Shown in pieces: positions 1,071-60,084 of a stretch of DNA of 64,000 nt (the stretch's first letter is position 1; each line of letters starts with the position of its first letter). The notes beneath the pieces are model-generated. The model made no database searches. It was not told the DNA's origin and worked only from the letters and a program-made list of their open reading frames with translations. The stretch is from NCBI GenBank assembly GCA_044892525.1, contig CM097885.1, positions 101,804,001 to 101,868,000 of the forward strand, given 5' to 3'. The DNA comes from Schmidtea polychroa (Eukaryota). The translations under genes were made by a program, and so were the position numbers.

Positions 1071-1431
1071 TTCCAATATTATTAGTATGTATAGTGATAG
1101 CCAATCTGGCGGTGAATTACCATATTTTATTGGTAAACAGTACGGATCAGGTTGGTTAAAAACAATAGGGAGATTTGCACTTCCTATTCTTAAACGTATT
1201 GGTAGTTTTGGTATGAAAACTGCAAAAGATGTGATTATGAATGAACAGAAAATATTACCATCTCTAAAAACAAATGCTTTAGCTGAGTTAGGGAAGGTTC
1301 TACCTGGAGTTGTTGGTATGTTTCAAAAAGATACGCCTCCATCCCCAGCCCCAGCTCCAAAATGTAAAGGACATGGAATATCGCGTATAAACAAACGAAT
1401 GAAAGGACATGGAACTATATTTGCAAAATGA
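1063..1431 (+). CDS. Small Polinton virion core/membrane-active precursor (QxGG / QxGxG-type)
   Basis: Y..QSGG.LPYF.G.QYGSGW..IGRFALPILKRIG: glycine motifs plus a basic amphipathic helix. It sits between penton and hexon, as in Mavericks. Confidence 0.7.
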   Translation: MANSNIISMYSDSQSGGELPYFIGKQYGSGWLKTIGRFALPILKRIGSFGMKTAKDVIMNEQKILPSLKTNALAELGKVLPGVVGMFQKDTPPSPAPAPKCKGHGISRINKRMKGHGTIFAK

Positions 1432-2455
1432 TTTGTGGTAAATTCGAATTATGTATATTTGATAGACCATCGCCCCAGGCTGTAATAGAATTTGGGGCCT
1501 TTGAAGAAGTTTTTCCTATGAATTCAATTACTGATAGTAGAAATGATATCGAGTTTTATATTAATGGTTCGCAAACTGAATATTTAGATTTGAACGATAC
1601 TTTAATGACTGTTCAGATCAAAGTTGTAGATAAAGATAGAAAAGTTTTGGATGCCAATGCGGATGTATTACCAAACAATTTCATGTTTCATACTCTGTTT
1701 AAAGATGCAGTGTTGGGATTTATTAATATCAAGATTGAGGGTGGAAATAATACATTCATTCACAAGGCGTTGAAAGAAACTATTTTAAATTACAATTCCG
1801 ATACTAAAAATACCTGTCTTACACATATGGGTTATGCAGCAACAGATGATGAAAGAAAAAAGTGGGTTAAAGGTTCAAAAGTATTCACTATGTGCTCATC
1901 ATTACAACTTGATTTTATGAATCAACCGAAATATTTACTACCGGGAGTTAATGTACATATTAGATTTAAAAGGTCCGATTCTGCATTATCTCTTACTAGT
2001 GCAACTGGTACACCAATTGCTAAAGGTGCTTCATCATTCTATAAAGAACAAATATTTGGTGACAGAAGAATGCCTAATTTTATTCTGGTAACATTTCAAA
2101 GTGAAACGCAATATAATGGGTCTTATACTGCTTCCACCTCAATTTTCAAAAACTTTGGTGTTACTTCATTGACTTTGTCGAAAAATACTGATTATAGAGA
2201 AACATATACTCAAGATTTCGAAAGTGATAGTTACTGTGCGACATATATGCAGAGTATGGTTAGAAATCTTGGTTATTTAGATAAAAACTTGAATTGCGGA
2301 ATAACTCTAGAAGATTTTAAAAGCAAATACCCATTTTTACATTTGTTTTAGCTCCGGATTTTGATTTAAATCAGAGTCAATTACCACAAAACGGGAATTT
2401 ACGACTGGATATTAAGTTTGCAAAGGTCATTACAGTTATAATATATGAGCAGTAA
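1428..2455 (+). pseudogene. Polinton/adintovirus major capsid protein (hexon, double jelly-roll), disrupted
   Basis: ELCIFD.P..Q..IE...FEEVFP...IEF.I.GS..EYLDL.DT is the typical N-terminus. There is an apparent internal in-frame deletion near 2015 (TGTP|IAKG). A -1 frameshift in the T run at ~2334-2338 hides the continuation FTFVLAPDFDLNQSQLPQNGNLRLDIKFAKVITVIIY, and the C-terminus is truncated at the protease junction. Confidence 0.9.
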
Positions 2456-2705
2456 TCAAGCAATAATCATCAATACTCAATCGTCTCATCTTGGTGGAGA
2501 ACATTGGATTGCTATATATATGAAACCTAGTAATATATTCGTGTTCAATCCAATGGGTTTCTATTATCCTGCTTTGTTGATATCAAAACTTCAAACAATG
2601 GGGAAACCTATCGTGTATAATAAAACTATGTTTCAAAATCCGTTGACCCAAACATGTGGTCAACATTGTTTAGCTTGGTTGTTGTATAAAAAATTTGATG
2701 TTTAA
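2445..2705 (+). pseudogene. Adenain-like cysteine (maturation) protease, N-terminally truncated
   Basis: AIIINT....GEHWIAIY (catalytic His), VFNPMG (canonical FDxxG Asp appears as Asn), FQ...QTCGQHC (oxyanion Gln, catalytic Cys). Confidence 0.85.
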
Positions 2706-2922: not shown

Positions 2923-2977
2923 GATTGGCTGATAGAGGAAAAATAATTTCTGATTGGTTGAGACATGGAAATATAAA
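2923..2977 (+). promoter_or_regulatory. Pol II promoter: two inverted CCAAT boxes (GATTGG at 2923 and 2952) plus TATA box (TATAAA 2972-2977)
   Basis: The boxes are 29 bp apart. TATA lies ~65 bp upstream of the aaaATG at 3037 that starts the spliced gene. Confidence 0.65.
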
Positions 2978-3036: not shown

Positions 3037-3094
3037 ATGGACGCAGATTTAAACAATATTTTGAATGCCATGTCGATGGGCGAAAATGGTAAAT

Positions 3095-3127
<33 letters not shown>

Positions 3128-3528
3128 TATTATTTTAGAGAATTTATGGTTTCAAGTTACAGAAAACATTTATAATCGAGAAAGTATTATTATTAGTGAT
3201 GATGATACGAGTAAATTTATTTTTTTTATTTTATAAATTTAAAAATTCAATTTAGGTGAATGCGAAATCATTGAAAATGATGACAATAATGGACCCTGTA
3301 AAATAATAGATGATATTGAAAATGATGTCACCAAATCACGTAAATTTATTTTATTTTATTTTATTTTATTTATTAGAAAATTTAGAATATGTAGTTATTA
3401 GCGATGATGATGTTCCAGCTACTAATGATTATGTCCCCACTCGAGAAGAAATTGATATTCCTATGCAGGATGCCCCTATGAGAGATGTCCTCTCTGAAGA
3501 GGAATATGATGCCCCCACTACTATTTGA
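3037..3528 (+). CDS. Spliced acidic poly-SIM-like protein of the Polinton; exons 3037-3088, 3139-3210, 3256-3339, 3377 (or 3386)-3528
   Basis: Three phase-1 introns (50, 45 and 37 or 46 nt), each GTAAAT...TTAG. The spliced frame is open for 119 (or 116) aa: MDADLNNILNAMSMGENENLWFQVTENIYNRESIIISDDDTSECEIIENDDNNGPCKIIDDIENDVTKSQNLEYVVISDDDVPATNDYVPTREEIDIPMQDAPMRDVLSEEEYDAPTTI*. After the TGA the same frame continues EESETDSESQC* to 3564. Confidence 0.8.
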
Positions 3529-3694
3529 GAAGAATCTGAAACGGATTCAGAGTCTCAATGTTAGTTTTTATATATTTATTTTTAACATTATGTTTAAAAG
3601 TTTATTTTTAACATTTATTTTTAATATAATTATTTTTTAACATTTATGTTTAAAAGTTTATTAATATTATTATTTTCGTAAAATATCATGAAAA

Positions 3695-3861
3695 GTTTAA
3701 ATGAAATTATGGTTCCTAATGATAATGAAACTATGAAAATGTTCATGAAAATTTGTTACGGAAATTTAAATGAAACTATGAATGAAACTATGAAATTTAA
3801 ACGAAATTATGGTTCCTAATGATAATGAAACTATGAAAATGTTCATGTAAATTTTTACGGA

Positions 3862-3865
<4 letters not shown>
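3695..3865. repeat. Imperfect tandem duplication (two ~65-bp copies, ~98-bp period) inside the Polinton
   Basis: gaaattatggttcctaatgataatgaaactatgaaaatgttcatg occurs at ~3704 and ~3803. Confidence 0.85.
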
Positions 3866-3892
<27 letters not shown>

Positions 3893-3949
3893 GAAATAAT
3901 TACTCCAAGTAGTTTGCAACTACATCAAGTAATAATAATAATAATATAT

Positions 3950-4164
3950 CTTGTAGTCTGCAGTCAGCATGCAGCTACATCAAACAATTTATTTATTGGG
4001 TAATAATTACCCTCTTTAAATATAGTCAGCATGCAGCTACATCAAACAATTTATTTATTAGGTAATAATTGCCCTTTATTAGATGTAGTCTGCAGTGAGC
4101 ATGCGGCTACATCTCTTTATTATGATTGCCCCAATAAATGTAGTCTGCAGTCAGCATGCAGCTA
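3950..4164. repeat. Tandem array (~65-bp period) containing the imperfect hairpin TGTAGTCTGCAGTCAGCATGCAGCTACA; runs into an N gap
   Basis: Core copies at ~3952, 4024, 4084 and 4140. Confidence 0.85.
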
Positions 4165-4395
4165 NNNNNNNNNNNNNNNNNNNNNNNNNNNNNNNNNNNN
4201 NNNNNNNNNNNNNNNNNNNNNNNNNNNNNNNNNNNNNNNNNNNNNNNNNNNNNNNNNNNNNNNNNNNNNNNNNNNNNNNNNNNNNNNNNNNNNNNNAACT
4301 ATCTTTGAACATAAAGAATATTATAGATTATTATTTTTATGGTTATTAGTTAATCCTTTTTTTTATAATGATAAAAATAGACTAACTAATAACAA

Positions 4396-5370
4396 TTGGT
4401 TATAATATGTTACACCATCTTTTATAATTTATCGTTAACAGGTAAATTATATCGCAAATATTGCCAATCTTCAATAGGCCATTCTAATTTATGCCATAAG
4501 ACCATGAAAAGGTATTATGGTCATAGATTCTATGGCATCAACTACTATATTTGTCCCATATGCGAGACAGCCCAAAATATAAAATATAAGTGTTTTTATA
4601 TGAGCCATAAGACTCATCTTAACCAGTATACAATATATAAAAAGAAACTTTTTAATAAAATAAAAAGTAAAACACCTGTAAATAATACACATGTAAATAA
4701 TAATTCGCGACCTATAACAAAAACTGCAAATAATACAAATAATACACATGTAAATAATAATTCGCGACCTATAACAAAAAATCTCTCTACAAATACTTCG
4801 CCCGTGATTATATCTTCTCCTGTGAATATAACTGCTCCTGTGATAAATCCCTCTGTGATAAAACCTTCTGTGATAAAACCTTCGGTGATAAAACCTTCTG
4901 TGATAAAACCTTCGGTGATAAAACCTTCTGTGATAAAACCTTCGGTGATAAAACCTTCTGTGATAAAACCTTCTGTGATAAAACCTTCTGTGATAAATAA
5001 TAAACGGCCTGCTGTTAGTTTTGGGTCTGGTGTTCCCTCTAAAATTACTAAAATAGATCAAATAAGTGATTTAAATAATATTCAAATAGGTGGTTCAGTA
5101 AATAATAAGAGTTCGATCGACATTGACGATGAACCTGAAATTGAGATAGATGTTAAGGGGGCGAGAACGAATTTACGCTTTAATATGAAAAAGGATAACT
5201 TGGTGCAAATTTCCCTTACAAATAAAATTATAAATAAATTAATTGCCGAAATCGTAGGTATGGGCACAGTTAAAATACAATTCACCGTTTTAATCCAATT
5301 CGAAAAAGATGGGGAAATTAGAGATAATTTTTTCTCTAATAGCGCCGAAGTTTTTTCAGAAATTTTTTAA
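4396..5370 (+). pseudogene. polB: N-terminal (terminal-protein-region) part of protein-primed PolB, separated from 5379 by a frameshift
   Basis: Contains a CPIC..HK.H zinc-finger-like motif, VIKPS repeats, then KIQFTVLIQFEK...FFSN. Restoring one T in the run at 5363-5368 gives EIFLINGMTRLNNK...GSGW, continuous with 5379..7886. Confidence 0.8.
4840..4997 (+). repeat. 15-bp coding tandem repeat GTGATAAAACCTTC(T/G), nine full VIKPS units plus flanking variants
   Basis: Direct count. The third position alternates T/G in the first six units (30-bp higher-order period). Confidence 0.95.
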
Positions 5371-5378
5371 TTAATGGA

Positions 5379-7886
5379 ATGACCAGATTAAATAATAAAA
5401 TTGGAAAGTTCACATATTTGGGTAGCGGATGGCGGGTAGTTAAAATCAAAGAGATAGATTTTATCCTAACTAAATATACACATATGAATAGGCTAGCTGG
5501 ACATAGTTATATCCCCACCCCATCAGCTTTAAATTCTAAAAAAGCAATAGTAAACGTTCAAAACAACGACGATATGTGCTTTATATATAGTATTTTAGCA
5601 CTGTTAAAACGCGATGTTATACGTCATCATAGAAATCGTGTTAGTTCCTATGAAAATTATTTAGGCGAACTGAATTTTGACCCTATAGATGATTGCCCCA
5701 TGAAATTATGTGATATCCCTAAATTTGAAAGGAAAAATAAGGAATTAAATTTGGCAATTAATGTATTAACCTATAGGAAAAACTCAGCTAAGCCTATAGA
5801 AAACGATGATAGTAACTATATCCCCCATCATCACCATTTAGATATTATTCACCGCTCTAAAGTTATAGACGGTCAACCAATTTACTTATTGTTATTAGAA
5901 GATGGTACCGAATTTCACTACACCGCAGTTTTTGATTTGCAAAAGTTAATGAACTCTCACCCTAGTAGCTCCTGTAGTGCTCGAATTCGTGTAAACTGGT
6001 GCCCCACTTGCCTTAATGGATTTAGATATAAAAATGCATTTGATATTCATGTCGCCTTATGCATAAAAAAACAGATAGGAACAACTCTATACACCCTACC
6101 TAAAGATAAAAATTTAATATTTAAAGATTACTCCAAAACAGTCACCCCGCCATTCGTAATATATGCCGATTTTGAGGCAATTTTACCTGAGGATATTACC
6201 CATCACCAAATACACTTGCCAATAACAGCAGGCATGTTTTTAATTAATAATTATAATAATACAAGATTTTATTATGAGTTTGTTGGTGAGGATTGTGTGT
6301 TGTCTTTCCTTCGTAAGGTGGAGGAAATTGCTGTCACAATTGTCCTACCATATTACGAAATGAATGGGCGAAAACCTATTCAAACTTTGTCTTTCGTTCA
6401 ACAGCGGGCATATAAAGATTCCAGAACCTGTTACCTTTGTAAAAAATTCATTAGAGATAGAGTTAGGGACCATTGCCACTTCACAGGCAAGTATCTTGGT
6501 GCTGCTTGTAGGAAATGTAATGTGTCTCGGCGAATTCAGAAACAGTTACCTGTTGTTTTTCACAATTTTAGGGGGTATGATCTCCATCATATTTTGAAGT
6601 ATGATTTGAAAGATTTTACTTCTTGGGAGTTAAATATTATTCCGACCACTACTGAAAAATTCATCTCTCTCATCGCGTACATTAACAAATTGCCTGTTCG
6701 TTTTATTGACAGCATGCAGTTTGTTAATTCATCTTTAGCAAAAGCAGTTAAGACTCTTTCCGATCTGCCTTTAACTTCTTCTGTTTTTGATGGCGCAATT
6801 GTTCGATCCAAAGGTATCTTTCCTTATGACTTCGCCACATCTCTTGAGGTTCTGGAATCGACTCTTGAACTACCTCCTATCTGGGATTCTGTATCTAATG
6901 ATGAGTATGCATTAGCCCAAGTTATTTGGACTCAGCAAAACTGCAATAACATGTTAGATTACATGTTAACTTACCTTAAATTAGACGTGTTTCTCCTCGC
7001 AGATTATTTTCAACAATTCCGTGCAAAGGCCATTGCTTACAATGGTCTTGAACCTCTTAATTTCTACGGAATTCCCGGTATGTCATGGGCTTCAGCGCTT
7101 ATGACATTAACGGAACCCATAGAACTTTTGCAGGACATGGAAATGTTTAATTTCTATGAAGGAGGTATACGGGGCGGGTTAACATTTGTTAACAAACATT
7201 ATGTTGCTAGTTCTGAAGACACAGAACTCTTGTATATTGATATTAATAACTTGTATGGTTGGGCCTTAAGCCAAAATCTGCCTTATGCTGACTCTGTATG
7301 GGTGTATGATGATTTTTATATTATACTTATAAGTAAAGGTTTAGGGTATAAGGAGTGGGTTTTCTTAAGACCTAAGTGTTATAGTTTGTTAGAGGCTAAA
7401 GATCATTTAAAAGCAAAGAGAGTCAAATTGATAGGGACTGAAATTGGACACCAGTCTTATTTAGACTGCTACAACAACAGCGTAGTATATACGGTGCCAC
7501 AGACGAGAATAGGAACACGCAACCACCGGCTCTTTACTTTTAAAAATAATAAAATAGCCTTGTCGAACAACGATGACAAGCGCCTTTGGGTGGGTCCTAA
7601 TACCAGTCTCGCATATGGACATTTTTTAGGAGTCGATGTTCCAGATGTTGACCATGTATCTGAAGTTGGTCCTCTCTTTGGCGGTATGAGCCCGAGCTTT
7701 GATGATGAGGATTGTGATGAATCCCAGAACAATAGAGTCGAAGTTGGTCCTCTCTTTGGCGGCATGAGCCCGAGCTTCTGTGATTCAGACGATAATGTAA
7801 ATATTGAGTATGACAATAATGATATGAATATTAATGTAAATATTGAGTATGACGTCGATATCGACGATGTTTTATTAAGCGATTAA
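5379..7886 (+). pseudogene. polB: Protein-primed family B DNA polymerase of the Polinton with polymerase core deleted
   Basis: Motifs present: GSGW, SYIPTP..L.SKKAIVNVQN.D..CF, ExoI YADFE, endonuclease-VII-like VRDHCHFTGKYLGAACRKCN, ExoII FHNFRGYD, KGIFPY, ExoIII YLKLDV, Pol motif A DINNLYG, and C-terminal LRPKCYS and ALS..DDKR..LAYGH. Motifs B (K..N..YG) and C (DTDS) are absent, with a junction near 7310-7330. Confidence 0.92.
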
Positions 7887-8166
7887 TAAATCTTTTAAAA
7901 CATTATTTTTGCGTTCTATTTTATTATGTAAATAATTTTTATTTTCGAAAACTCGTTATAGTTTTCATTACTTTTTTCATCCTTAGTTACATTTTATAAT
8001 ATTGGTAATTAAACTCTATAAGTATCTAATGATGGAAAAAGTAATATGGTATGTTTTTGTGTATGTTGCAGTCAGCATGCAAATACATGTATTATGGTAT
8101 GTTTTTATGTATGTTGCAGTCAGCATGCAAATAAATGATAATAATAAAAATAATAATAATAATAAT

Positions 8167-8195
<29 letters not shown>

Positions 8196-8210
<15 letters not shown>

Positions 8211-8797
8211 TAATAATATGAGTCATCGTTCTAAAAATATGTGGCATCGATTACATAATAGTTCTAAAAATATGAGACATCGTTCTAAAAATATGAGGCA
8301 TCGTTCTAAAAATATGAGGCATCGATTACGTAATAGTTCTAAAAATATGAGGCATCGTTCTAAAAATAATGAGCTATCGATTAATAAATTCAGATGATGG
8401 AAACAATAACTTGTTGCATGACCAAAACCATGTCACCGCTAGATCACTAATAATATTTTGAATAATAATAATAATTTCACTATGAAAAAGATGGTGGTCA
8501 TCAATTGTTAATAACTATACCAATAATAATGATGATGATAATATTTATATATCAGTAGATAGACTGGGCTTTAAAATGAGCTATCGATCGATGAAATAAA
8601 ATGATGAGAACGATAACTTTTGGACAAACGAAAACCAGGGGCCCGCTGGACCACTAATAATATGAGGCATCGTTCTAAAAATATGTGGCATCGATTACAT
8701 AATAGTTCTAAAAATATGTGGCATCGTTCTAAAAAATATAATTTTTCAGACCGGGGGGGGAGGGGTATGTGGTCTAGCGGGCCCCTATCCATCTACT
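8196..8797. repeat. Polinton subterminal/TIR region with 21-bp (AATATGAGGCATCGTTCTAAA) and 33-bp tandem units
   Basis: Arrays at ~8215-8368 and ~8659-8735, a G-run at 8753-8765, and terminal CATCTACT at 8790-8797. Confidence 0.8.
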
Positions 8798-8829: not shown

Positions 8830-9450
8830 TTATTTAATTTCTTTATTGGCATTTCATCAACTTCGGGTTCTATATTGCAAAAAGTGCTAACTGAATTTGG
8901 TGCAATATTTTTATATTCGATCTTAGAATTACTGTAAAATGGAAATGTGTTGTACACAAATGTCAATCAAAGCAACTTCTCACATGTTGTCCAGGTGATT
9001 GGGATTTTGTAACTCTACAATAAATTTACTAGCGTTATTATTAATGGACAACTATTGCTTGGTAAAATAGTGAAAAAACATTTTTCTATTCATTCAATTT
9101 GAGATGCTGATATGGTAGTTGGGTTTTGATATCCATGTCACCTAACCTATAATTGTTTCTCCTTACCTTTATATTTTGTTATAAAAATCTTTTCAATTCT
9201 GAAGACAGATGGTGTAGGAATAACTTGCAGTTCCTGTTCGTAAAGTTTACACTGGATTTCATTATCATCATTATCTTTAATAACATACATATCATGATTC
9301 TTTTGTCATGTTTTATTAGATAATAAACATCTTCCAATAAAAACTTCATCTAGTCAATTACATGAAGGTCTAGATATATTACGAAATGTGATTTAGTAAA
9401 GAGCAATATGAAACCTTTCTTTCAGAAAAATCTCTAACTGTCTAACTTTA
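8830..9450 (-). pseudogene. Older Polinton relic (copy 2): integrase C-terminus (9090-9450) followed by penton N-terminus (8830-9081)
   Basis: The minus strand reads N*LDEVF...YVIKDNDDNEIQCKLYEQELQVIPTPSVFRIEKI...VR*HGYQNP, then FTILPSNSCPLI..NASKFIVELQNP...*EVAL..TFVYNTFPFYS. The latter is clearly homologous to ORF 9..1070. Confidence 0.85.
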
Positions 9451-19288: not shown

Positions 19289-20178
19289 TCAGTAGTTAGA
19301 AAACTTTATCTGAAAAAATTCTATTGGGAGTGAAACATTGTCTTTAATTTGATGAAGGACTGCGCCGGCGGTGAAATTTGATGCATCTGTTGTGAGGATG
19401 AATGGGAGGTCATGACTCGGGTAGTGAAGTGTTGTAATCTTGGCTAGAGCGTCTTTGACTGTGTTGAATGCGTCACATGTTGTGTCGGACCAGTTAATGG
19501 TGGAGTTTTTCTTTCCTTTGTTAAGTGCTGAAAGAGATGCCGTTATGTGTGATGCGTTTTTATGAATCTGTGAGAAAATTGACAATGCCAAAAAAGCTAC
19601 ATTGTTGTGTTACGGTGGCGGGTAATGGAAAAGCTGCGGATTATGTCAAGTCATTTAGGAAAAAGTTCGCAACCCGTAGATGAAATTATGTGACCAAGGA
19701 ATCTGACGCGTTTTTGAAAGAAATTGCATTTATTTACATTGAACTGTAAGTTATAACGATTCAAAATGTCAAAAACAGTGTGTAGGTCTTCGTTATGTGT
19801 CTTGCGGTCGGGTGATGCTTCGATTATATCATCGAAGTATGCAAAAGCGTGGGGGACGTCCCGGAAAATTGTGTCCATGAAACGTTGTAAGGATTGACAG
19901 GCATTCCTTAGGTCGAAAGGCATGAACATGTATTCGAAATTTCCAAATGGTGTGGGTACAGCGGTTTTGGGAACATCATCGATGTGGACAGGAAACTGAT
20001 GGTAAGCTTTCGAGAGGTCAATAGTGGAAAATATGGTGGATTGTGAAAAGCGGGTTATAAAATCTTTGATAAGTGGCATTGGGTATGCGTCGTGAACAGT
20101 GACTTGATTGAGTTGACTGTATTCGTCGCACGGCCTGAGTGAACCGTCTTTCTTGGTGACTACGTGTATTGGTGACAC
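19289..20178 (-). pseudogene. pol: Gypsy/Ty3 pol fragment (RT and partial RNase H)
   Basis: SPIHVVTKKDGSLRPC, FSTIDLSKAYHQ, KTAVPTPFG..EYMFMPFDL, YFDDII, FLGHII and ILTTDASNF, with stops and frameshifts. Confidence 0.93.
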
Positions 20179-26673: not shown

Positions 26674-27869
26674 TGAAAAATAAAAACAATAATTTCCTCT
26701 TTTTAAGAAAGTCAGCTATCCCATTTGATTGGCTAATTTCAATTATTTAAAACAAATATCACTTCTTTCCATATTGCAATATATATATTTGGAATAAATT
26801 TTATTTGTCGGTTGACAAACGATTTAAGATGAGTAATTAATTATTTATAATTATTTAATTATAATTTTATACTTTAATAAATTATTTGAAGTTCGAATTT
26901 AATTAATTAAATGATTTTTTATTGGTCATCCATAAGATTTTTTAGTTTTTTTTAACGTTTGATCGGTTTTTGTTCTTTCAACATTTCACCTATTTTCATT
27001 ACGTCTATAGATCAAATCTTTTTCAATATGTAACACTGCCTTTTTCAAGTATTATTTTAACACTTGATAAAGACAGTAGTGAAAATTTCTGTTACACAAA
27101 CAAAAAAGAAATTTCATCTATAGTCATAATGAAAATAAATTATAGTTTTTTGTTATCAAAAGAGACCTTTGAAATCTTCTATTATTACATCATCCATTTT
27201 TTACAATGGATATTAATTTTATCTGTTATACTCATCATTTACAGTGTCTAACATAGGTGTAGGTATCTGTTATGTGTTATTTGATGGTTTTATCTTATTT
27301 ATTTACCCTATTTATAGTTATGTTTTATAAATGTATATACTATATTATGTTGATTATTATTTTCAGTTGCCACTTTATGTTAGGAAGATTTGTAGAGCCC
27401 GATAGAGTCACCTATAAAATTATTTGGCGGGTCAATCGGGGTGATTGTATGTAGTGCGTGTAATAATACAGACTATAATAAAATAAAATTTACAAATTTA
27501 TTAATAGAGAAAATGATACTTGAATTAGATAAAATCTTTTTGTTAATAGTTTTCGATTATTTTCCCCTTTGCTATGTCTTTGGCCGAACTGGGTCTATAT
27601 ATTTTCTTCGAACTTCTGTGTTTTTCCGGTGATTTGAATTAAGCGAAAATTTCTTCCGGAACTTGATCATATACGAAAGGATTAGTTCCTTTCTTTAATA
27701 ACTTTTGATAATTTACAACTTTCTTGTTTCCAGATAATCAGGTTTTCGTATTTCATTTATTCCACACGACAGCTTAGTTATCGCTATATAGTTTTTTAAA
27801 ATATCCTTCGTCCACCGCTACTGGGACGACAATGACCCAAAAGAAAACAAGGCCAAATTGAAATATCGT

Positions 27870-28150
27870 TTAAAATTACAATGACAGTTAACATACAACA
27901 ATCTGTTACAGTATCCTTTGTTAATTTTTGAATAAGGAATCATTTCCATCAAATTCATTTGCCATAAATCATTGGTTCCAAATGTTTTGCATGGCCTTGT
28001 TGAGAATCGCTTCAACATTGGTCTATTTAAACTAAAGGCTAATTGATCAGATAACTATTTCTGAGTTTTTTTCTTTGAATTATTTACTCGTTTTGCTAAT
28101 TTTTCTACACCACCAAAACCAATTGGATCTTTTGGGTTTTTTCATATTGA
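27870..28150 (-). pseudogene. int: Polinton retroviral-like integrase, N-terminal relic
   Basis: NPKDPIGFGGVEKLAKR...LSDQLAFSLNRPMLKRFSTRPCKTFGTNDLWQMNLMEM..YSKINKGY matches the Polinton integrase N-terminus (DLWQxDL). Confidence 0.85.
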
Positions 28151-28281
28151 TTAGAGCTTTTTCTCCTTTGTTTTCAGTTTTTTCTCGTTAGTTTTGGAAA
28201 ATATTTCCTTCATTATTACAGCACGTCGTTAAAATATTTAAATCTATAATATAGTTTTTGGTAATGAACTCTTGGTGCCCA

Positions 28282-28570
28282 CTAAGATCTTAACAATGAA
28301 ATTGCCCTAATTGCTGATAAGACTATTGGAATTAATGCACCCAAGAACCCACCTTTGTTTATATATTATCATTCTCATCAGACGCCTATTCTTAGTATCG
28401 ACCAACAATAAAAGGGATCTCTTATATCTTTGCAATACTAATCTTTTAGTTTTAGTAATATTAACATTACCACAAACAACATTTACAATAACTTCAAGTA
28501 AATCATCAATAAAAAAACTGGAAAAGCTTGTAAAATCGACATTCGTTTTGTATTTGAAGCCTTTATCCAA
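28282..28570 (-). pseudogene. Small Polinton protein ending in an adenovirus protein X-like GGFL + amphipathic helix
   Basis: LLEVIVNVVCGNVNIT...LQRYK..L, then after a frameshift KGGFLGALIPIVLSAIRAISLL (compare adenovirus pX RGGILPLLIPLIAAAI). Confidence 0.7.
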
Positions 28571-28789
28571 GCATTAAAATATGATAAATTCCGTTCAAAT
28601 TTCATTATTACTTTATTTCACGTGATGGATTGTTTATAATTTAATCCATTTTGTTTCTTACCCTTCTTAGTATTCTTACTTTTCATACTAAGTTTTATTT
28701 TCTTATTAACTTTTTAGGAAACATTTGGAACTATAGAGTTTTTAACAATAACTTTTTTAAATGTCATGGTTAGTTTTAATTAGTTGTTT

Positions 28790-29273
28790 TCAATTTTGTT
28801 TATAAATCGTGATACCATTTACATTAAAAATATCTCTTCTAATAAGCAAATTATCAGGAAATTGTATCATATATTGAACATTTAAATGACGCGTTCTTTG
28901 ACTTCCACCTTGATGAAAAGGGTTTTGTATTATGAAAATAACTGTAACCCCACAATGTCTACTGATTTTTGTAAATAGATTATTAAAACCTTTTTCTTTA
29001 TTTGATTCCTGATACAAATCATCGATAATAATAACATCACCTTGATGTAATCTAGATGACCAATTTTTATCAAATCTTTTAATTATAGTCATTTTTTAAT
29101 TTACATAAACTGTTTTGAGTTAGACCATGCTCTTCATTTGAAACTCTCTGTCAATAAATTTTTTTGAATTTTGATTTAAACATGTTTGATTGTAATAAAT
29201 TACATGCGAATAAAGTTTTTCCACTACCACTAGGTCTTACAATTTGATATACTGTATCATTTCTTAATTCCAT
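28790..29273 (-). pseudogene. Polinton A32/FtsK-like packaging ATPase, disrupted
   Basis: MELRNDTVYQIVRPSGSGKTF (Walker A, G>R), IIIDDL (Walker B), and LFTKISRH...VIFIIQN.F..G...RT..LN.QY. Confidence 0.9.
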
Positions 29274-29492
29274 TTTAATTAAACTGTTTTGTTTTATTTG
29301 TTTATAATTAGAATAATATCAAAAATGATAAGAAACATCAATTATAGAGGAAGATGATTAGTAGATGGAATGAACAGATATTGTGTTACAAATATCCAGA
29401 ATAATCTGGAATATAAGATTACTTTTATGTATTTATTTGAAATAATAATTGTAATAAACAATAATTATAATAAAAAAAATTATAATAATAAT

Positions 29493-43579: not shown

Positions 43580-46500
43580 TGTAAAACATTAAAATCAGTT
43601 TTTGCTTCCATAAAATTTATTTCAGTAAATATTAATATCAAATTATATCTTCTTTAATCTTTCTTATTTAAACAAATTTTCTACGAAGATATTTTTAATT
43701 AAAATATCTTCTTATATTTTTTTTAAATATTAATCTAAAATTTAATTTTTAAAATTTTCAATTTAAAAATTTCTTCATCATAAAACTTCCTCATATCTCC
43801 CTTCTTAAGAAATTTTTAAGTTTTTCCACATTTCTTTCGATCCTTTTTCCATCTTCATTTCTTAAGATGTATCGTCTGTCATGCACTTTCTCTATCACTT
43901 TGTACGGACCTTCATACCTGTCCTGGCCTTTGTGGCGTGTTTCTACTTTTACTAATACTTCTTCTCCTACATTGAATTTTCTCCTTGTTTGTTCTTCTAG
44001 TTCTTCCTTTATCGGTATTTCTTTGGACCCGTACCATTTTTCCCTGTTAATCTTTTTTCCAAAAACTATCTCTGTCGGGCTTTTCCCTGTCGTTTTTTGT
44101 TTGGTTGCATTTAAAGTGAATTCGACTTCTGGTAATATCTCTGCCCAATCCGTCTTCTTTCTATCCTGTAAAGTAGCATTTATCAAATCCCGTATTGTCC
44201 TGAATTGTCTTTCTATCTGACCGTTTGTTTGGTGATGGTATGGACTCGAAAAACATAATTTAATATCTAGCATCTTTGTGAATTCTCTCATCATTCCTGA
44301 TTCAAACGCCTTTCCGCAATCAACTCTTATCTCCTTTGGGCATCCAAATCTTAAAATCCACTTTTCTAAAATCGTTTTCTTTATTGTTTTTTCGTCTTGT
44401 TTTGTTATCGCTGTCAAGACTTGATACTTACTATACTGATCTATTATGCCCAATATATACTTCTTACGTCCTTTTGTTTCTGTCAACGGTCCACATATAT
44501 CCACGAATATAATTTCGAACATTTCCTTCGAATCTTGTTTTTTTTACTGGTTCTTTCGTTGTTATTGTTAAAGCCTTGGTTTTTTGACAAATCTCACAAC
44601 TTCGAATAATTTCCTGAATCTGACTCCACAGGTGTTTTCCAACATATCTATCTTTCATATAATCGGCAATCTTCTCGACTCCAGCATGACACAATAGTCT
44701 ATGTATTTCCTTTATTGTTTCTTGTAACTCATTTTCAGGTATCATCGTTTTCTTTCGTACTTCTTCTACCATTCCATGTTGGATGTTGCTTCTTCCCTCT
44801 TCTCTGATCGAGTCTAGTAATCTGTTTTTTTATCTTTCCTTTCTTAGCTTCTTCGTGGGCCATTTGACATTGAACACACGTGTCACATTTAGTTCTCGAC
44901 ACCATGTCTGCATTTTGGTGATTAATACCATTTCTGTATTCTACTCTTATATCTAAACTGCTCAAATAATTGATCCATGTTTGGAATTGTGAAGTAATCG
45001 GCTTCTTGGTTGTCATCATAAACGTTATTGCTTTGTGGTCTGTCCTGAGCGTGAATCTTCTTCCGTAGAGATAGTGCTTAAAATGAATGCAAAAATAATA
45101 TACCGCCAATAATTCCTTTCTTGTAATACAATATCCTTTCTCGTGGCTCGTCATCGAGTGTGATCCATACGCAATTACTCTTTCCTTTTCATCTTTATCT
45201 CTTTGTGAAAGTACTGCTCCAATGGTATCGAAACTAGCGTCGGTATCTAAAATGAACTCCTTTTTCAGATCCGGAAAACATAAGATTGGCGCCGTCGTGA
45301 GTGCTAATTTCAATCCCTCAAACACGCTATTCGTTCCTTCACTCCATTCTAATTTTTTGTTACTTGGTCCGCTACATAATTGTTCTAACATCCTTGCCTT
45401 CTTTGCATAATCACTGATGAATCTTCTATAATAATTGCAAATACCTAAAAAGCTTCGGAGTTTCTTTACGCAATTAGGCTTCCCAAAGTTCTGTATGGCC
45501 TGAATTTTAGATGGGTCTGTCTGTACTCCTTCCTTGCTGATTATGTGTCCTAAGAATCTGATTTCTTCCTTTATTATTTGGCATTTTTCTGGATTAATCC
45601 TTAGGCCTGCTTCCTCAATCGCCTTTAACACTTCTCCGAGTATTGTATAGTTTATCTCTTTACTGCTTGAATAAATCAAGATGTCGTCCAAATACACCAT
45701 TGCTCCCTTTATTTTGCCTAATACTTTTGTCATCATTTCTTGGAACTTACCTGGTGCTGCTGTAATTCCAAACGGCATTCTGTTGCGACAATATTGTCCG
45801 TTCTTTGTTGAGAAAGCTGTTTTCTCCTGTGATTCTTCTTCTAGTTCCACTTGGTAATATGCATTACCTAGATCGATTGAGCTGAAAAAGACGGATCCTC
45901 CTAACAAATCCAACATCTCGTCTATGTTTGGCATTGGAAATGCCTGCCTCTCTGTTACCGCGTTCAGCTGTCTAAAGTCCAAGCATAGTCTAATATCCTT
46001 TTTCTCTTTTTTCCATACACATATTAGCGGTGTATTCCATGGATAGTTACATTTCCGTATAATTCCATTTTCGTACAAATTTTGTATTGCTTCTTCAATC
46101 TTTGATTCCAAATTTAGTGGTTGGCGATATAGTTTTATGTTTATCACCATCTTGTGTTTTACCAAATGTGTGCGACCCACATCCCATTTATCTGCCATAA
46201 ACACGTTTCCACTGTTTGTTATAATTTCCTTTAATCTGCTATCTTCATTGATCTTTAACTGTTCCAACGCTCGTATCAATCGTTCTTCATCCTTTATTTT
46301 TCTGCCAAATTTGCGCTTCAATGTTACAAATATAGTTCTTGTCTTTTTCACTAGCCTCGATATCTTTAGTTTTTAACAGTCTAAATCCAAATGTTTCTTG
46401 TAATTCGATTCCTCCAATCACATCTGGTGTCACTTTCTCCGCCACAATGAATATAACTTCCTTCGAAACATTTCCAATGGTTACTTGCACCTTCGTTTTC

Positions 46501-52617: not shown

Positions 52618-55600
52618 TTGGAAAAGGAAGAGATAGAAAAAGCCAAGACCAACAGACAACTACACAGGAAACCGGCATCAGTGGAAAGATTATTTGAATC
52701 AAACAGTTTAACTAACGAATTTGAGAACAGCGACGATTTTAAACGAACCGAATTAGATCCAATAAGCGACGCCGAATCAACTGACGAAGAGGAAAATATA
52801 TCCGAGACAACAGAGATAACCGTACTGTGCCAAGAGATAATGTCGGACGGAAACACGAATGAACAAAGGGTAACGGACCCACCAGGAACAAGTAATGTTC
52901 ACGTCAACATTGGAGAATTCAGAGAGAAATTTCGAGGAGAGCCATTCGATGGAAATATAAACCAGCTGGAAACGTTTATAAAAGAATTCGAAATATGCAT
53001 TACGATATGTCACTGGCCAGACATAGTCATACGAGAGCGAATACCCCTATATCTAAAGGGAAGCGCCCAAGATGTATATTTAGAGGCAAAATGCGATGCA
53101 ACAAAGTTGAGAACATGGAAAGAGATCAAAGAGTTTTTAATAAAAACCTTCGGTACCGAAAAGGAAGGAAATCGGAAAATGTTGGACTTTCTACATCGAA
53201 AGCAGAAATATAACGAATCCAATGCACTGTACGCATGTGAAATGAAACGATTAGCAAGAGAAGCCTTCGATTCAAATCAACCAGTTCCGGAAGATAAGAT
53301 AATAGCCGTATTCGTAGATGGTATGAAGCGAGAGGATATACGAGCAACCTTGGGATGTCGAGCACCAGAGATGCCGGAAGAAGCACTAAAAATGGCTAAC
53401 AAATGTGAAACCTACTTAACACCAATACAAGTAGCAGCTATGACAGCAGCCCCAGCAGCTCCAGCAACAACAGCAACAACTACAAACAACCAAGTCAATA
53501 ATGCAAATCCAGTAATGAATCAATTCATCCCAGGATCGCAACAGTTGTTCAAAACCCCACAAACAAGAAACCAAGACAATAGAGGTAATATTCAAAATTT
53601 TACTAATAATTTCAGGAACAACGACATTAACAATCGAACGTGCAATATATGCCAACGATCAGGGCATTGGAGCAATGAATGTTATAGAGCAAGGATGTGT
53701 CAAAAGTGTGGGAGAAGAGGACACACGGAAAACGTCTGTAGCGGACCCATGAAGTCTATTGGCAGAGGAGGAACCAGAACCTGCTACAATTGTAATCAGC
53801 CTGGACACATGGCAAGGGAATGCAAGATGAGAGTGAAACCAAATCAACCAGGATCAAACAATCCAATTCAGAACACACAAATCAACCTCATGCAGGAAAT
53901 CGAACAATTAAAAGATATGATCCAACGAATACCGGTGAATAATCAACAACAACGAATCAACATGATGCAGAGCACCGAGGAAATCCGGAAGCAACCAAGC
54001 AGGCAACAACAAGATCAACAACGAATCGAATGGCAAAGATTACAAAACGAAGAAGCCAGAGAAATTCAAGAAAGATGGAAACAACGGGACGCGAATCCCG
54101 GAAGAATAAATATGATGAGATTAACAAATAAAGAGGAACCGCACACTGCGGAGCAGTGTGTTAACAACGAAGGGAGTGGTCCGATAATAAACGAGGAGAT
54201 AAAAACGACAAAAGAAAATGAGATTGATCAACGGACAGAATTAAGCAGTGAAGAGAAAATACAATTGATTAAAGAATTTACCCAAGAGGAGAAAGAAAGG
54301 AGACAAAAAAGAGATGAGAGTAAAGATGAATCAAAAAGTAATGAAATAGTTACAAAAATTCGAATTCAGAGGGTACTACTACAAAAAATCGAAGACAGAA
54401 TCAAAAACGAAAACCCTACATTAACTAAGGAACAAATAAAAGAAAAAGTGAAAGAGCATTGGTTCAGGAAAAATGAGTGGTTCGAAAAGAAAGAACCACA
54501 TACCAAAGCTAAAATAAACATGCTGAGACAAATGCGGAGTGACCAGACGGATCAGGAAGACGAGAAAAGTGAGGTGAGTAGCCTGGGAGGTGAATTATTT
54601 CAGTCAAGTGAGGAAAATAACGAACCAAAAACACCTCCAAACAGTGAAACACCTCAAAGTAGTGATGAGAGTGAAAATGATGACATGAAATCAATGATAG
54701 AAAAAGATGATGAGGAGATATTTGAGGAAATTTTCGACACAGTAACAGAAATAGAGCGAAATGAGAGCTACATCAACGAGTTAATATACAGAAAATGCTT
54801 AAAACTTATAACTCAAGTATACCAGTGTGAAGGAGGTATAATAACGGCAGCATGGAAAGAATTAACAACAAAATATAAAGAGAAACTAAAGGAAGCAGAC
54901 CCAGATCAATATCAAGTAAGTATTCAACACCCTGAGATTCAGATACAGACTATTGAATTAAAAGGAACAAATACTGATGAACTGTACAACTGGGTACAGG
55001 AAAAAATGGGAACGAGCCATAAAAATAAACAATTATATGTCGATGGTTACAAAGTTAAAATGGGCATACATTTGGTAGATGCGATGATATGGCCAAACGA
55101 AACGAACATCTTAACCTTAGAGAAAACCAGAGACGACGAATCAGTGGCAGAAATGTTCAAGAAAATCCAACAAGTGTTTAACAATGAAGTGGAACCAGAA
55201 TTGGAAAAGATCGAACGGAAAATAATGAAAGAAAATCAAATAATCTTAGTCAAACAAGCTATCGATCAGGCAAGGAAATATATTAATAGACTAAGAGAAA
55301 GATGGCCGCAACTAATGAAACAATTTGTCAAAGACGTACGAGACACGGAAATTATGAGATTCGAAGATAAACGAGCGACAGAATTGATATCAAAATACGG
55401 AGAATACGAGAGAACCAAATGTGAACAAGAAACGATAAAAATAAAGGTGAAATTGCCAAATGAAGAGAAACAAATAATAGAAGTTAATCCCGATTGCCAA
55501 GTTGACGAGTTAGTGCAAATCATAGATCAAGAGATCATCCAAAAAGCTCGAGAAAATAGTGAGGATGGAATGATCGAAGATGTGATAATAATGTACAACC

Positions 55601-55995: not shown

Positions 55996-56001
55996 GATAT
56001 A

Positions 56002-56520
56002 TTGCCACAAGAATTCCAAAATGATTTACAACCAGAAGAAGATGAAGAGATACGAGAACCGGTAAGGTTAGCGCCATTCACGTGGAAAATTGAGAATTGG
56101 ATGGAAAAGATAAAATCAGCAAAGGAAGAGAAAATCACACGATTAGTAAGTCCACCGTTCTACTCAGGATTAGGTGAATACAAGATGAAATTGCGAATAT
56201 ACCCGAACGGAGACGAGGTAGGAAAAGGAAGTTACGTATCAGCATTCTTCATCATCTGCAAAGGGAACTATGACGACAAGGTACCATGGCCGTTTAGCAG
56301 AAAAGTAACGATAGCAATCGAACACTGAAAGATAGCCTTAACGTACATAAAGAAACAATGAAACCAGATCCAAGGAGCACCTGCTATCAACGACCGACGA
56401 CATTAGAAAATATCGCTTCTGGGACGTCTAAATTAATACGTCTAAGTTACATTGAGAATGATTAGTCAATATTCGTGAAAGACAATGCCATCCAGATCAG
56501 AGTGGAGGTGGAAACAGAAA
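56002..56520 (+). pseudogene. TRAF-C (MATH) domain within the polyprotein (frameshift ~56326, in-frame stop 56463-56465)
   Basis: FTWKIENW...SPPFYSG..EYKMKLRIYPNGD..GKGSYVSAFFII.KG.YDD..PWPF..KVT, then KPDPRSTCYQRPT..ENIASG...FVKDNAIQIRVEV: the classic TRAF-C motifs. Confidence 0.92.
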
Positions 56521-60075: not shown

Positions 60076-60084
60076 ATAAAAAGA

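What the first reader, a model, noticed from the sequence alone, without database searches (positions are those of the whole stretch)
3037..3564. Hidden spliced gene inside a Polinton encoding tandem SUMO-interacting-like motifs
Seen: three tiny phase-1 GTAAAT..TTAG introns whose removal gives an open 119-aa acidic protein with ESIIISDDD, CEIIENDD, KIIDDIE and YVVISDDD. Exons 2 and 3 are symmetric (72 and 84 nt) and each carries such motifs, so skipping either keeps the frame. Established: (V/I)-x-(V/I)-(V/I) cores followed by Ser and acidic residues are phospho-SIMs (Daxx IIVLSDSD, PML VVVISSSED), and SUMO-dependent silencing restricts DNA viruses and transposons. Inference: a virus-encoded poly-SIM decoy or adaptor against SUMO-based silencing, possibly with a splice-tunable SIM count. 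Introns are unusual in Polinton genes, and the ORF track misses this gene.
Basis: partly seen in the sequence, partly recalled or inferred. Interest (0 to 1): 0.86.

Follow-up and report, generated by a model that had tools for sequence, protein, structure and literature searches.

The report
Small spliced acidic gene beside Polinton polymerase
A four-exon gene missed by ORF finders sits between the protease and polymerase genes of a decayed virus-like transposon (Polinton); it encodes a very acidic 119-residue orphan protein with four loosely SUMO-binding-like motifs, so the gene model holds on sequence grounds while the SUMO function stays a hypothesis.

Summary
Removing three tiny, phase-1, almost pure A+T introns (GTAAATT...TTAG; 50, 45 and 37 or 46 nt) joins four exons into a 119-aa (or 116-aa) ORF with pI 4.05. 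A strict spliced-ORF search finds nothing else like it in the window and nothing in 200 shuffles. Every exon scores as coding in the predicted frame. A promoter-like CCAAT-CCAAT-TATA block lies upstream.

The protein is an orphan. I found no relative in 1.84 billion representative proteins, JGI metagenomes, IMG/VR, PDB, Pfam or 11 sister loci.

The SIM reading is only loosely met:
- No motif fits the strict four-residue core (I/V/L at three set positions).
- All four fit the looser published definition (P = 0.0008 against shuffles).

TGA is an ordinary stop here, so the sense-codon idea fails.

Introns are not unique to this gene in the lineage. Sister Polintons carry a Bcl-2-like gene and an acidic gene with 41-43-nt introns. 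That acidic gene has strict acid-flanked SIM cores, and one sister element encodes a Ulp1-type protease.

The neighbouring genes are broken, no second copy was found and no expression data exist. My verdict is a real, probably element-borne accessory gene; SUMO binding is plausible but unproven.

The parts
2923..2961 (+). Two GATTGGYTGA boxes (inverted CCAAT type), 29 nt apart, about 85-115 nt upstream of the ATG. Promoter-like.
   Evidence: These are the only two exact copies in the 64-kb window. The same ATTGGTTGA plus an A/T-rich box lies upstream of the Bcl-2-like gene of sister locus L001. Function is inferred, not shown.
2971..2977 (+). ATATAAA, a TATA-like box about 66 nt upstream of the ATG.
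   Evidence: Read directly from the sequence. Inference only.
3037..3088 (+). Exon 1 (coding part), with ATG in an AAAATGG context; 52 nt.
   Evidence: Codon score in frame is +0.345 per codon.
3089..3138 (+). Intron 1: 50 nt, phase 1, GTAAATTATT...TATTTTAG, largely a (TTA)n run.
   Evidence: G+C is 4%. Found by my scans. TRF shows period 3.
3139..3210 (+). Exon 2: 72 nt, carrying ...ESIIISDDDTS.
   Evidence: +0.308 per codon in frame.
3211..3255 (+). Intron 2: 45 nt, phase 1, GTAAATTTAT...CAATTTAG.
   Evidence: G+C is 7%.. Its 5' end resembles that of intron 3.
3256..3339 (+). Exon 3: 84 nt, carrying CEIIENDD and CKIIDDIEND.
   Evidence: +0.411 per codon. There is an internal 16-nt duplicate, 3270-3285 and 3315-3330, at 94% identity.
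3340..3376 (+). Intron 3: 37 nt, phase 1, GTAAATTTAT...TTTATTAG. An alternative in-frame acceptor lies 9 nt downstream (intron end 3385).
   Evidence: G+C is 5%.. It contains a (TTTAT)5 run.
3377..3528 (+). Exon 4 coding part including the TGA stop. It carries EYVVISDDD and VLSEEE.
   Evidence: +0.497 per codon. Positions 3379-3411 duplicate 3174-3206 of exon 2 at 76% identity.
3529..3564 (+). Short in-frame stretch after the stop, running to the next stop, with the same acidic/Ser composition.
   Evidence: Codon score is +0.264 in frame against -0.07 and -0.54 in the other frames. It is too short to decide whether the ORF was once longer.
2445..2705 (+). Polinton maturation protease (adenain-like, C5), the upstream neighbour.
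   Evidence: Pfam Peptidase_C5, E 4.2e-06. It is 61% identical to the L010 protease.
1428..2446 (+). Capsid-module gene (409 aa in L001); broken in this copy.
   Evidence: tblastn to the L001, L002 and L003 proteins. I count one frame change, and the gene is about 48 residues shorter than in L001.
4396..7886 (+). [quoted passage not shown]
   Evidence: Pfam DNA_pol_B_2, E 2.4e-16. Relatives are about 1190-1260 aa and 57-59% identical. I count one frame change and one large internal loss of about 285 residues.
3565..4395 (+). Repeat-rich spacer between the gene and PolB. It holds 14-nt, 45/100-nt and 62-nt tandem units, an (AAT)13 run and one masked N stretch (not touched).
   Evidence: Sister loci L003 and L005 also have repeat arrays upstream of PolB.

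Best explanation
The sequence supports a genuine, or recently genuine, RNA polymerase II-type accessory gene. It has a promoter-like CCAAT/CCAAT/TATA block, four exons and three 37-50-nt spliceosomal introns. It lies in the variable slot between the maturation protease and the polymerase of a decayed Polinton.

Shown from the sequence: it encodes a 119-aa, strongly acidic protein (net charge -27, pI 4.05) built by internal duplication. The protein carries four modules of a short aliphatic run, then Ser or Glu, then acidic residues, spaced 11-18 residues apart.

Inferred: the protein is disordered. Each module can add a beta-strand to a partner's groove while the acidic or CK2-type phospho-Ser patch contacts a basic rim. 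This is the layout of a 'parallel' SUMO-interacting motif, so four modules would bind SUMO chains or multiply sumoylated proteins multivalently. Bound in this way, the protein would compete with host SUMO readers that assemble repressive complexes on incoming or integrated DNA.

My estimates are about 0.8 that the gene model is real, about 0.7 that the gene belongs to the element rather than to host DNA, and about 0.3 that SUMO is the partner.
For: Gene model:
- Composition contrast between introns and exons, and the repeated extended donor.
- Uniqueness in the window and 0 of 200 shuffles.
- Codon scores.
- Start context and the promoter-like boxes.

The same intron class occurs in accessory genes of sister elements:
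- The L001 Bcl-2-like gene has a 41-nt GTAAAT...TTTAG intron placed exactly at the end of the Pfam Bcl-2 match. The next exon supplies a hydrophobic tail.
- The L003/L005 acidic gene has a shared 42/43-nt phase-1 intron.

Slot: acidic ORFs follow the protease-side module in L004 (170 aa, pI 4.05), L001 and L010.

Motifs:
- [IV][IV]ISDDD occurs twice and C[EK]II[DE] twice, each in 0 of 20,000 shuffles.
- There are four sites under the loose SIM definition of PMC12751080, all with the acidic patch on the C-terminal side. Shuffles give a mean of 0.60, P = 0.0008. Density is 33.6 per 1000 aa against 1.44 in other sister-element proteins.

Lineage context:
- Strict acid-flanked SIM cores occur in the L003/L005 acidic proteins.
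- A Ulp1-family (C48) protease, E 1.5e-22, lies next to PolB in L009.
Against: - There is no homologue anywhere and no second copy, so conservation, selection and splice-site conservation cannot be tested.
- None of the four motifs meets the strict hXhh/hhXh core. PMC8616421 warns that the consensus is degenerate and that many putative SIMs are not real.
- Similarity to the sister acidic proteins does not exceed what composition gives (P 0.03-0.8).
- The flanking capsid-module and polymerase genes are broken, so this copy sits in a dead element and may itself be inert.
- The element's ends were not found, so the gene could lie at a junction of two truncated elements.
- There are no expression data.
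Confidence: 0.35

Rival explanations
1. A real spliced accessory gene whose acidic, disordered product works through a partner other than SUMO. One candidate is an Atg8-family protein, because the EYVVISDDD module also fits the [WFY]xx[LIV] core. Other candidates are a basic DNA-binding, histone or core protein (charge mimicry or chaperoning) and a CK2-dependent docking partner.
For: The strict SIM core is absent. Two [WFY]xx[LIV] matches and six S/T-x-x-D/E sites are present but not enriched. PMC12751080 notes that the SUMO and Atg8 grooves are related. The acidic ORFs of L004 and L001, in the same slot, have no SIM-like site at all. This suggests that acidity is the shared property of the slot, not SIMs.
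Against: The four modules are the only strongly non-random feature of the sequence, and they follow the core-then-acid layout of parallel SIMs. The LIR and CK2 patterns are at chance level.
Confidence: 0.28
2. Passenger DNA. This would be a piece of a host gene, exons with their introns, picked up by the element or simply lying between two truncated elements. It would now be without function in a transposon graveyard.
For: - Sister elements clearly carry host-derived spliced genes, such as the Bcl-2-like gene.
- The sister elements closest in sequence have a different conserved gene ('YFID...') after the protease, and the window lacks it.
- Neighbouring genes are broken, and the window is full of nested retroelements.
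- Element ends were not found.
- It is unclear whether the polymerase belongs to the same element as the protease. The closest relatives have the polymerase on the opposite strand, while L002 and L009 have it on the same strand.
Against: - The unit is complete rather than a fragment: promoter-like boxes, ATG, three intact introns and a stop.
- The spacer is only 1.7 kb and repeat-rich, like the polymerase-upstream regions of L003 and L005.
- Acidic ORFs occupy the same slot in L004, L001 and L010.
Confidence: 0.25
3. No gene at all. Under this reading, chance open frames are separated by simple-sequence expansions that happen to begin GT and end AG.
For: Intron 1 is largely (TTA)n and intron 3 (TTTAT)n, and similar microsatellites flank the region. 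With loose GT...AG rules an A+T-rich sequence offers many ways round stops.
Against: All three segments share the extended donor GTAAATT and a TTAG end, and all fall in phase 1. Exact removal keeps one frame. None of 200 shuffles reproduced this. All four exons score as coding in the right frame, far above random windows. The motifs are duplicated across exons.
Confidence: 0.05

Closest known systems
Phospho-regulated 'parallel' SIMs of cellular proteins such as PML and Daxx (as described in PMC8616421 and PMC12751080)
   Same: An aliphatic run is followed directly by Ser and acidic residues. The Ser sits in a CK2-type context (S-D-D-D), and the region looks disordered.
   Different: The cores here have three aliphatic residues (III, VVI), or two plus Cys, not the four-position hXhh/hhXh pattern. 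No sequence relationship was found: PDB searches of each exon peptide gave nothing even at E <= 10.
Multi-SIM polySUMO readers (SUMO-targeted ubiquitin ligases and similar; PMC12751080)
   Same: Several SIM-like modules lie in a row, 11-18 residues apart, which would favour chains over single SUMO.
   Different: There is no RING or any other domain. The protein has only two Cys and no Pfam hit, so at most it is a reader or decoy, not a ligase.
SIM-bearing proteins of nuclear DNA viruses that counter PML-body repression (reviewed in PMC8616421, section 7.3)
   Same: The proposed logic is the same: a DNA-virus-like element meeting SUMO-dependent repression with its own SUMO-binding motifs.
   Different: Those proteins are large, carry catalytic or DNA-binding domains and have been tested experimentally. 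This is a 119-aa orphan in a broken element with no functional data.
Spliced acidic accessory gene of sister Polintons L003 (15439 to 14990, minus strand) and L005 (14747 to 14252, minus strand)
   Same: It is acidic, Ser/Asp-rich and 135-150 aa, with a tiny phase-1 intron of the same class. It has aliphatic-run-plus-SDDD/DSD motifs, and in these proteins the motifs meet the strict core.
   Different: It sits next to the packaging ATPase, not the protease. It has one intron, not three. Its similarity to the candidate is not above composition (P 0.03-0.15), so homology is not shown.
Host-derived spliced cargo genes in Polintons, for example the Bcl-2-like gene of L001 (12382-12911)
   Same: The intron class is the same (41 nt, GTAAAT...TTTAG, 12% G+C), and a similar ATTGGTTGA plus A/T-box lies upstream.
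   Different: That gene has a clear cellular family (Pfam Bcl-2, E 4.8e-10). The candidate has none.

Membership tests
SUMO-interacting motif (SIM) proteins | Four-residue core hXhh or hhXh with h = I/V/L (PMC8616421) | tested here: not met
   There are 0 matches in the 119-aa product, and shuffles of the same protein give about 2.2.
SUMO-interacting motif (SIM) proteins | Loose definition (PMC12751080): a four-residue core with at least three hydrophobic residues (V, L, I, also C), the residue next to the charged stretch aliphatic, and an adjacent acidic or phosphorylatable stretch | tested here: met
   There are four sites (residues 33, 44, 56, 74), all with the acidic stretch on the C-terminal side. 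Shuffles give a mean of 0.60, P = 0.0008. The density is 23-fold that of other sister-element proteins. The rule set is my own coding of the review's wording.
SUMO-interacting motif (SIM) proteins | Motif lies in an accessible, disordered segment | not tested
   Only composition is known: 27% D+E, net charge -27, few aromatic residues. The spliced protein has no reference, so it could not be given to the structure predictor.
SUMO-interacting motif (SIM) proteins | Direct binding to the SIM groove of SUMO | not testable with these tools
   No complex prediction or assay is available.
Phospho-SIM (CK2-regulated) | Ser immediately after the core with acidic residues at +1 to +3 | tested here: met
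   S-D-D-D follows III and VVI, and S-E-E-E follows VL. This holds at sequence level only. S/T-x-x-D/E sites overall are not enriched (P = 0.12).
SUMO-targeted ubiquitin ligase (SIM array plus RING) | RING or other ligase domain | tested here: not met
   The whole protein has two Cys, and exon 4 has no Pfam family.
Spliceosomal intron | GT...AG ends, a consistent extended donor, and a size class shared with other introns of the lineage | tested here: met
   GTAAATT occurs three times with TTAG ends, and lengths are 37-50 nt. Sister-element introns are 41-43 nt and begin GTAAAT or GTAATA.
Spliceosomal intron | Conserved in relatives or seen in RNA | not testable with these tools
   No relative of the gene exists in any collection searched, and there are no RNA data.
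Polinton/Maverick gene complement | Homologue present in other Polintons | tested here: not met
   There is no tblastn match in 11 sister loci. Only positional and compositional analogues were found.
Polinton/Maverick gene complement | Lies inside the element, between its terminal repeats | tested here: inconclusive
   The gene is flanked by the protease (2445-2705) and PolB (4396-7886) on the same strand. No terminal repeats were found, and the closest relatives place PolB on the opposite strand.

The most novel reading that the evidence does not exclude
A lineage of animal-type Polintons carries a fast-evolving, intron-bearing 'SUMO toolkit'. It would consist of small acidic proteins built of tandem SIM-like modules (this gene and the L003/L005 gene) and, in some members, a Ulp1-type protease (L009). 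The toolkit would blunt SUMO-dependent chromatin silencing of the element, with the number of modules adjustable by exon duplication or exon skipping.
Probability: 0.15. Interest if true: 0.8.

Novelty: new variant of a known kind. Interest (0 to 1): 0.5.

Why it matters
Polintons are usually annotated with ORF finders and are treated as intronless. This case, together with the spliced Bcl-2-like and acidic genes in sister elements, shows that part of their accessory gene content is invisible to that approach.

If the SIM-like array does bind SUMO, Polintons would join the nuclear DNA viruses that target SUMO-dependent repression. They would do so with a minimal decoy-type protein rather than a ligase. 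That would give a simple sequence signature to look for in other endogenous virus-like elements.

If it does not bind SUMO, the locus remains a clean example of a small orphan gene that grew by internal duplication of a short linear motif.

Tried and rejected
Searches that found nothing:
- Exact-sequence look-up of eight window ORFs. None is in the 15-billion-protein collection, so the source genome is absent and other copies could not be fetched.
- Word-based search with exon 4.
- Exhaustive phmmer of exon 4 against 1.84 billion representatives: 0 hits.
- tblastn-confirmed scans of JGI metagenomes and IMG/VR with exon 4: none.
- PolB scans of the same collections: only two distant loci, or none.
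- PDB searches with each exon peptide at E <= 10: none. Pfam on exon 4: none.
- Rfam over the whole window: nothing.

Host identification failed:
- There is no host gene in the window.
- A search with the retroelement glycoprotein gave one unnamed hit.
- A literature search gave no lead.

Element ends: inverted-repeat and self-blast searches found only microsatellites.

Homology between the candidate and the acidic ORFs of L001, L003, L004 and L005 is rejected as unproven, because alignment scores fall within the shuffles.

Ideas rejected:
- TGA as a sense codon.
- A 'fourth intron' at 3847-3893, which would give only an 18-codon ORF and is not part of a gene I can define.

Step left out: structure prediction and database searches with the full spliced protein. 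It has no reference, and I did not type it in.

(a) While reasoning I recalled from memory short SIM strings of a few human proteins. I used none of them in any tool or in this report. The motif descriptions cited come from the papers read.
(b) The tblastn table printed segment coordinates for the broken neighbouring genes, and I reasoned from them about where frames change. Those places are not repeated here, and only counts are given.

Full report
**Setting.**
The window is A+T-rich eukaryotic DNA, 22-31% G+C over the first 42 kb, and is packed with mobile elements.
- On the plus strand at the left edge lie the end of an integrase, three capsid-module genes, an adenain-like protease (2445-2705; Pfam Peptidase_C5) and a protein-primed family B polymerase (4396-7886; Pfam DNA_pol_B_2).
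- All of these match proteins of Polinton contigs recovered from ENA metagenomes.
- Pieces of a second, diverged Polinton lie on the minus strand. Where the two overlap they are 67% identical in DNA.
- The rest of the window holds LTR retroelements.
- The exact proteins of this window are not in the 15-billion-protein collection, so the source genome and its other copies were out of reach.

- The exon and intron coordinates, the phase of all three introns, the exon lengths (72 and 84 nt) and the four quoted peptide strings are all correct.
- The product is 119 aa, or 116 aa with an in-frame acceptor 9 nt further on. Its pI is 4.05 and D+E make up 27%.
- The longest unspliced ORF is 72 aa.

**It is not chance.**
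- The three introns are 4-7% G+C against 25-39% for the exons, and all start GTAAATT. That heptamer occurs only 31 times in 128 kb of both strands.
- I scanned the whole window for GTAAAT...TAG/CAG segments of low G+C flanked by richer, open sequence. It returns only these three and one more about 300 nt downstream of the gene's stop codon.
- A strict spliced-ORF finder gives a single hit in the window. It gives none in 200 dinucleotide-type shuffles of the A+T-rich 42 kb, even at the relaxed threshold of two introns and 80 codons.
- With a codon model trained on the element's own conserved ORFs, the spliced frame scores +0.415 per codon. Every exon is best in its predicted frame. The best frame of random 357-nt windows reaches 0.138 only at the 99th percentile.
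- Upstream lie two GATTGGYTGA boxes, the only exact copies in the window, and an ATATAAA box. The ATG has an A at -3 and a G at +4.

I therefore take the gene model as well supported on intrinsic grounds. RNA evidence is still missing.

**The introns fit the lineage.**
Literature on vertebrate Mavericks reports intronless ORFs (PMC8097293), so introns are unusual for Polintons as a class. The sister elements of this particular lineage, however, hold other spliced accessory genes.
- In L001 a Bcl-2-like ORF ends exactly at the end of the Pfam Bcl-2 match. It is followed by a 41-nt GTAAAT...TTTAG segment of 12% G+C. Removing that segment adds an acidic linker and a hydrophobic tail. To my knowledge animal Bcl-2-family genes have an intron at this position; this rests on memory and was not tested.
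- L003 and L005 share an acidic gene with a 42/43-nt phase-1 intron at the same place.

The candidate's introns are thus of the type expected for the hosts of this lineage. Spliced cargo is a recurrent feature that ORF callers miss.

**Is it part of the element?**
- It lies in a 1.7-kb spacer between protease and polymerase, on the same strand as both.
- The relatives closest in sequence (L001, L004, L010) have the polymerase on the opposite strand, converging on the protease. L002 and L009 have it on the same strand.
- No terminal repeats could be found. I cannot decide whether the window shows one element or the junction of two truncated ones.
- Either way the slot is an accessory region. 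In L004, L001 and L010 an acidic ORF (170 aa with pI 4.05, about 111 aa, and 42 aa) follows the protease-side module. In L009, L003 and L005 the stretch upstream of the polymerase carries accessory genes or repeat arrays.
- Those relatives also have a conserved 'YFID...' gene after the protease, and the window lacks it.

**State of the neighbours (counts only).**
- The capsid-module gene has one frame change and is about 48 residues shorter than in L001.
- The polymerase has one frame change and one large internal loss of about 285 residues.
- In the second element the ATPase has one frame change. Its integrase is interrupted by about 18 kb of foreign sequence and lacks its middle part.

So the gene sits among dead genes. 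At roughly one disruption per kilobase, an intact 360-nt coding sequence is not surprising and says nothing about selection.

**An orphan.**
- Exon 4 (49 aa), the least repetitive part, found nothing in any protein or contig collection searched.
- No exon peptide found anything in PDB at E <= 10. Exon 4 has no Pfam family.
- There is no second copy in the window or in 11 sister loci.
- Alignment scores against the acidic ORFs of L001, L003, L004 and L005 are within what shuffled sequences give (P 0.03-0.8). These are analogues by position and composition, not demonstrated homologues.

**The motifs.**
The protein shows internal duplication at the DNA level:
- 3174-3206 against 3379-3411, 76% identity.
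- 3270-3285 against 3315-3330, 94% identity.
- The 5' ends of introns 2 and 3 also resemble each other.

At the protein level [IV][IV]ISDDD and C[EK]II[DE] each occur twice, in 0 of 20,000 shuffles.

| SIM definition | Source | Result in the candidate |
|---|---|---|
| Strict: hXhh or hhXh, h = I/V/L, acidic flank | PMC8616421 | No match; about 2.2 bare cores expected by chance |
| Loose: four-residue core with at least three hydrophobic residues (Cys among the preferred), the position next to the charged stretch aliphatic, then an acidic or phosphorylatable stretch | PMC12751080 | Four sites, all in 'parallel' layout; 0.60 expected, P = 0.0008; 33.6 per 1000 aa against 1.44 in other sister-element proteins |

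Both reviews stress that the motif is degenerate and that many predicted sites are not real. The SIM-like character is therefore real but only in the loose sense.

**Circumstantial support from the lineage.**
- The L003/L005 acidic proteins do carry strict, acid-flanked cores. One of them is formed across the splice junction.
- L009, whose polymerase is 57% identical to the window's, encodes a Ulp1-family (C48) protease next to the polymerase (E 1.5e-22). The lineage's maturation protease is the short C5 type. A SUMO theme is thus conceivable. However, C48 and C5 belong to one clan (my knowledge), and L009 is only 5.7 kb, so I cannot show that it has both.

**The stop codon.**
TGA ends the conserved gene 1063-1431 exactly where the sister proteins end, and it ends several other ORFs. 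The standard code therefore applies and the sense-codon idea is not supported. The short in-frame stretch beyond the stop keeps the acidic/Ser composition and a positive codon score, but it is too short to decide whether the ORF was once longer.

**Verdict.**
- The gene model is confirmed on sequence grounds (about 0.8).
- The gene is probably element-borne (about 0.7).
- SUMO binding is the single most specific mechanism the sequence suggests, but it is unproven (about 0.3).
- The main rivals are another partner for an acidic disordered protein, or an inert passenger.

- One search printed segment coordinates of the broken neighbouring genes, from which I reasoned about frame changes. These places are not repeated here.
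The only joins made were of predicted exons as they stand: the candidate, the L001 Bcl-2-like gene and the L003/L005 acidic gene.
- Masked N stretches were left untouched.

Noticed in passing
window 8935-9440 and 27866-29276, minus strand: These are pieces of a second, diverged Polinton: the integrase C-terminal part plus the start of the next gene, then the integrase N-terminal part, a small gene and an A32-like ATPase. They are 67% identical in DNA to the first element where the two overlap. The integrase is split by about 18 kb that includes reverse-transcriptase and RNase H ORFs (19289-20178, minus strand).
   Followed up: partly
window 52618-61041, plus strand; 43791-46351, minus strand: These are LTR-retroelement genes. 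One element has a long zinc-knuckle gag-like ORF, an 864-aa ORF matching the Monjiviricetes (rhabdovirus-type) fusion glycoprotein family (E 1.3e-69) and an aspartyl protease. RT, RNase H and integrase ORFs of another copy lie on the opposite strand. An env-like glycoprotein of negative-strand RNA virus type in a retroelement may deserve its own look.
   Followed up: partly
L001 12382-12911, plus strand: This is a Polinton-borne Bcl-2-like gene with a 41-nt intron placed at the end of the Bcl-2 domain match. A second exon gives a hydrophobic tail anchor. TBP-like genes lie nearby in L001, L003, L005 and L006, and RING-finger genes in L002 and L006. These point to an animal host and to host-derived cargo.
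   Followed up: partly
L009 708-1565, plus strand: This is a Ulp1-family (Peptidase_C48) protease gene, E 1.5e-22, immediately upstream of PolB in a sister Polinton. It is preceded by an acidic, Pro/Gln-rich partial ORF.
   Followed up: partly
L003 15439-14990 and L005 14747-14252, minus strand: These are orthologous spliced acidic genes (135 and 150 aa, about 65% identical) next to the packaging ATPase. They have a shared 42/43-nt phase-1 intron and strict acid-flanked SIM-type cores. The metagenome gene caller had only the second exon.
   Followed up: yes
window 4838-4997; L002 9031-10035: The N-terminal (terminal-protein side) region of the polymerase carries a 15-nt tandem repeat of 10.7 copies, giving a five-residue Pro/Ser/Val/Ile/Lys unit. 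The matching region of L002 has repeated acid- and Ser-flanked VIDI motifs.
   Followed up: no
window 3565-4165 and 8094-8130: The spacer upstream of PolB is built of tandem units of 14 nt, 45/100 nt and 62 nt. The 62-nt unit contains GCAGTCAGCATGCAGCTACATC, and its core recurs once downstream of PolB near 8115. An intron-like GTAAAT...AATAG segment at 3847-3893 lies in the 100-nt unit but defines no convincing ORF.
   Followed up: partly
window 8002-8397 and 8575-8735: This ORF contains a poly-Asn run and 21-nt repeats encoding a basic His/Arg/Ser/Lys/Asn unit, with a second partial copy about 370 nt on. It has no family match.
   Followed up: no
L001 4464-4943, L002 8228-8566, L003 9011-9325, L004 4769-5239, L006 5876-6358, L010 3743-4228: A conserved 104-161-aa gene follows the protease in sister Polintons. 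It has an N-terminal 'YFID'-like motif and a C-terminal Cys/Tyr-rich motif, no Pfam family, and is absent from the window.
   Followed up: partly
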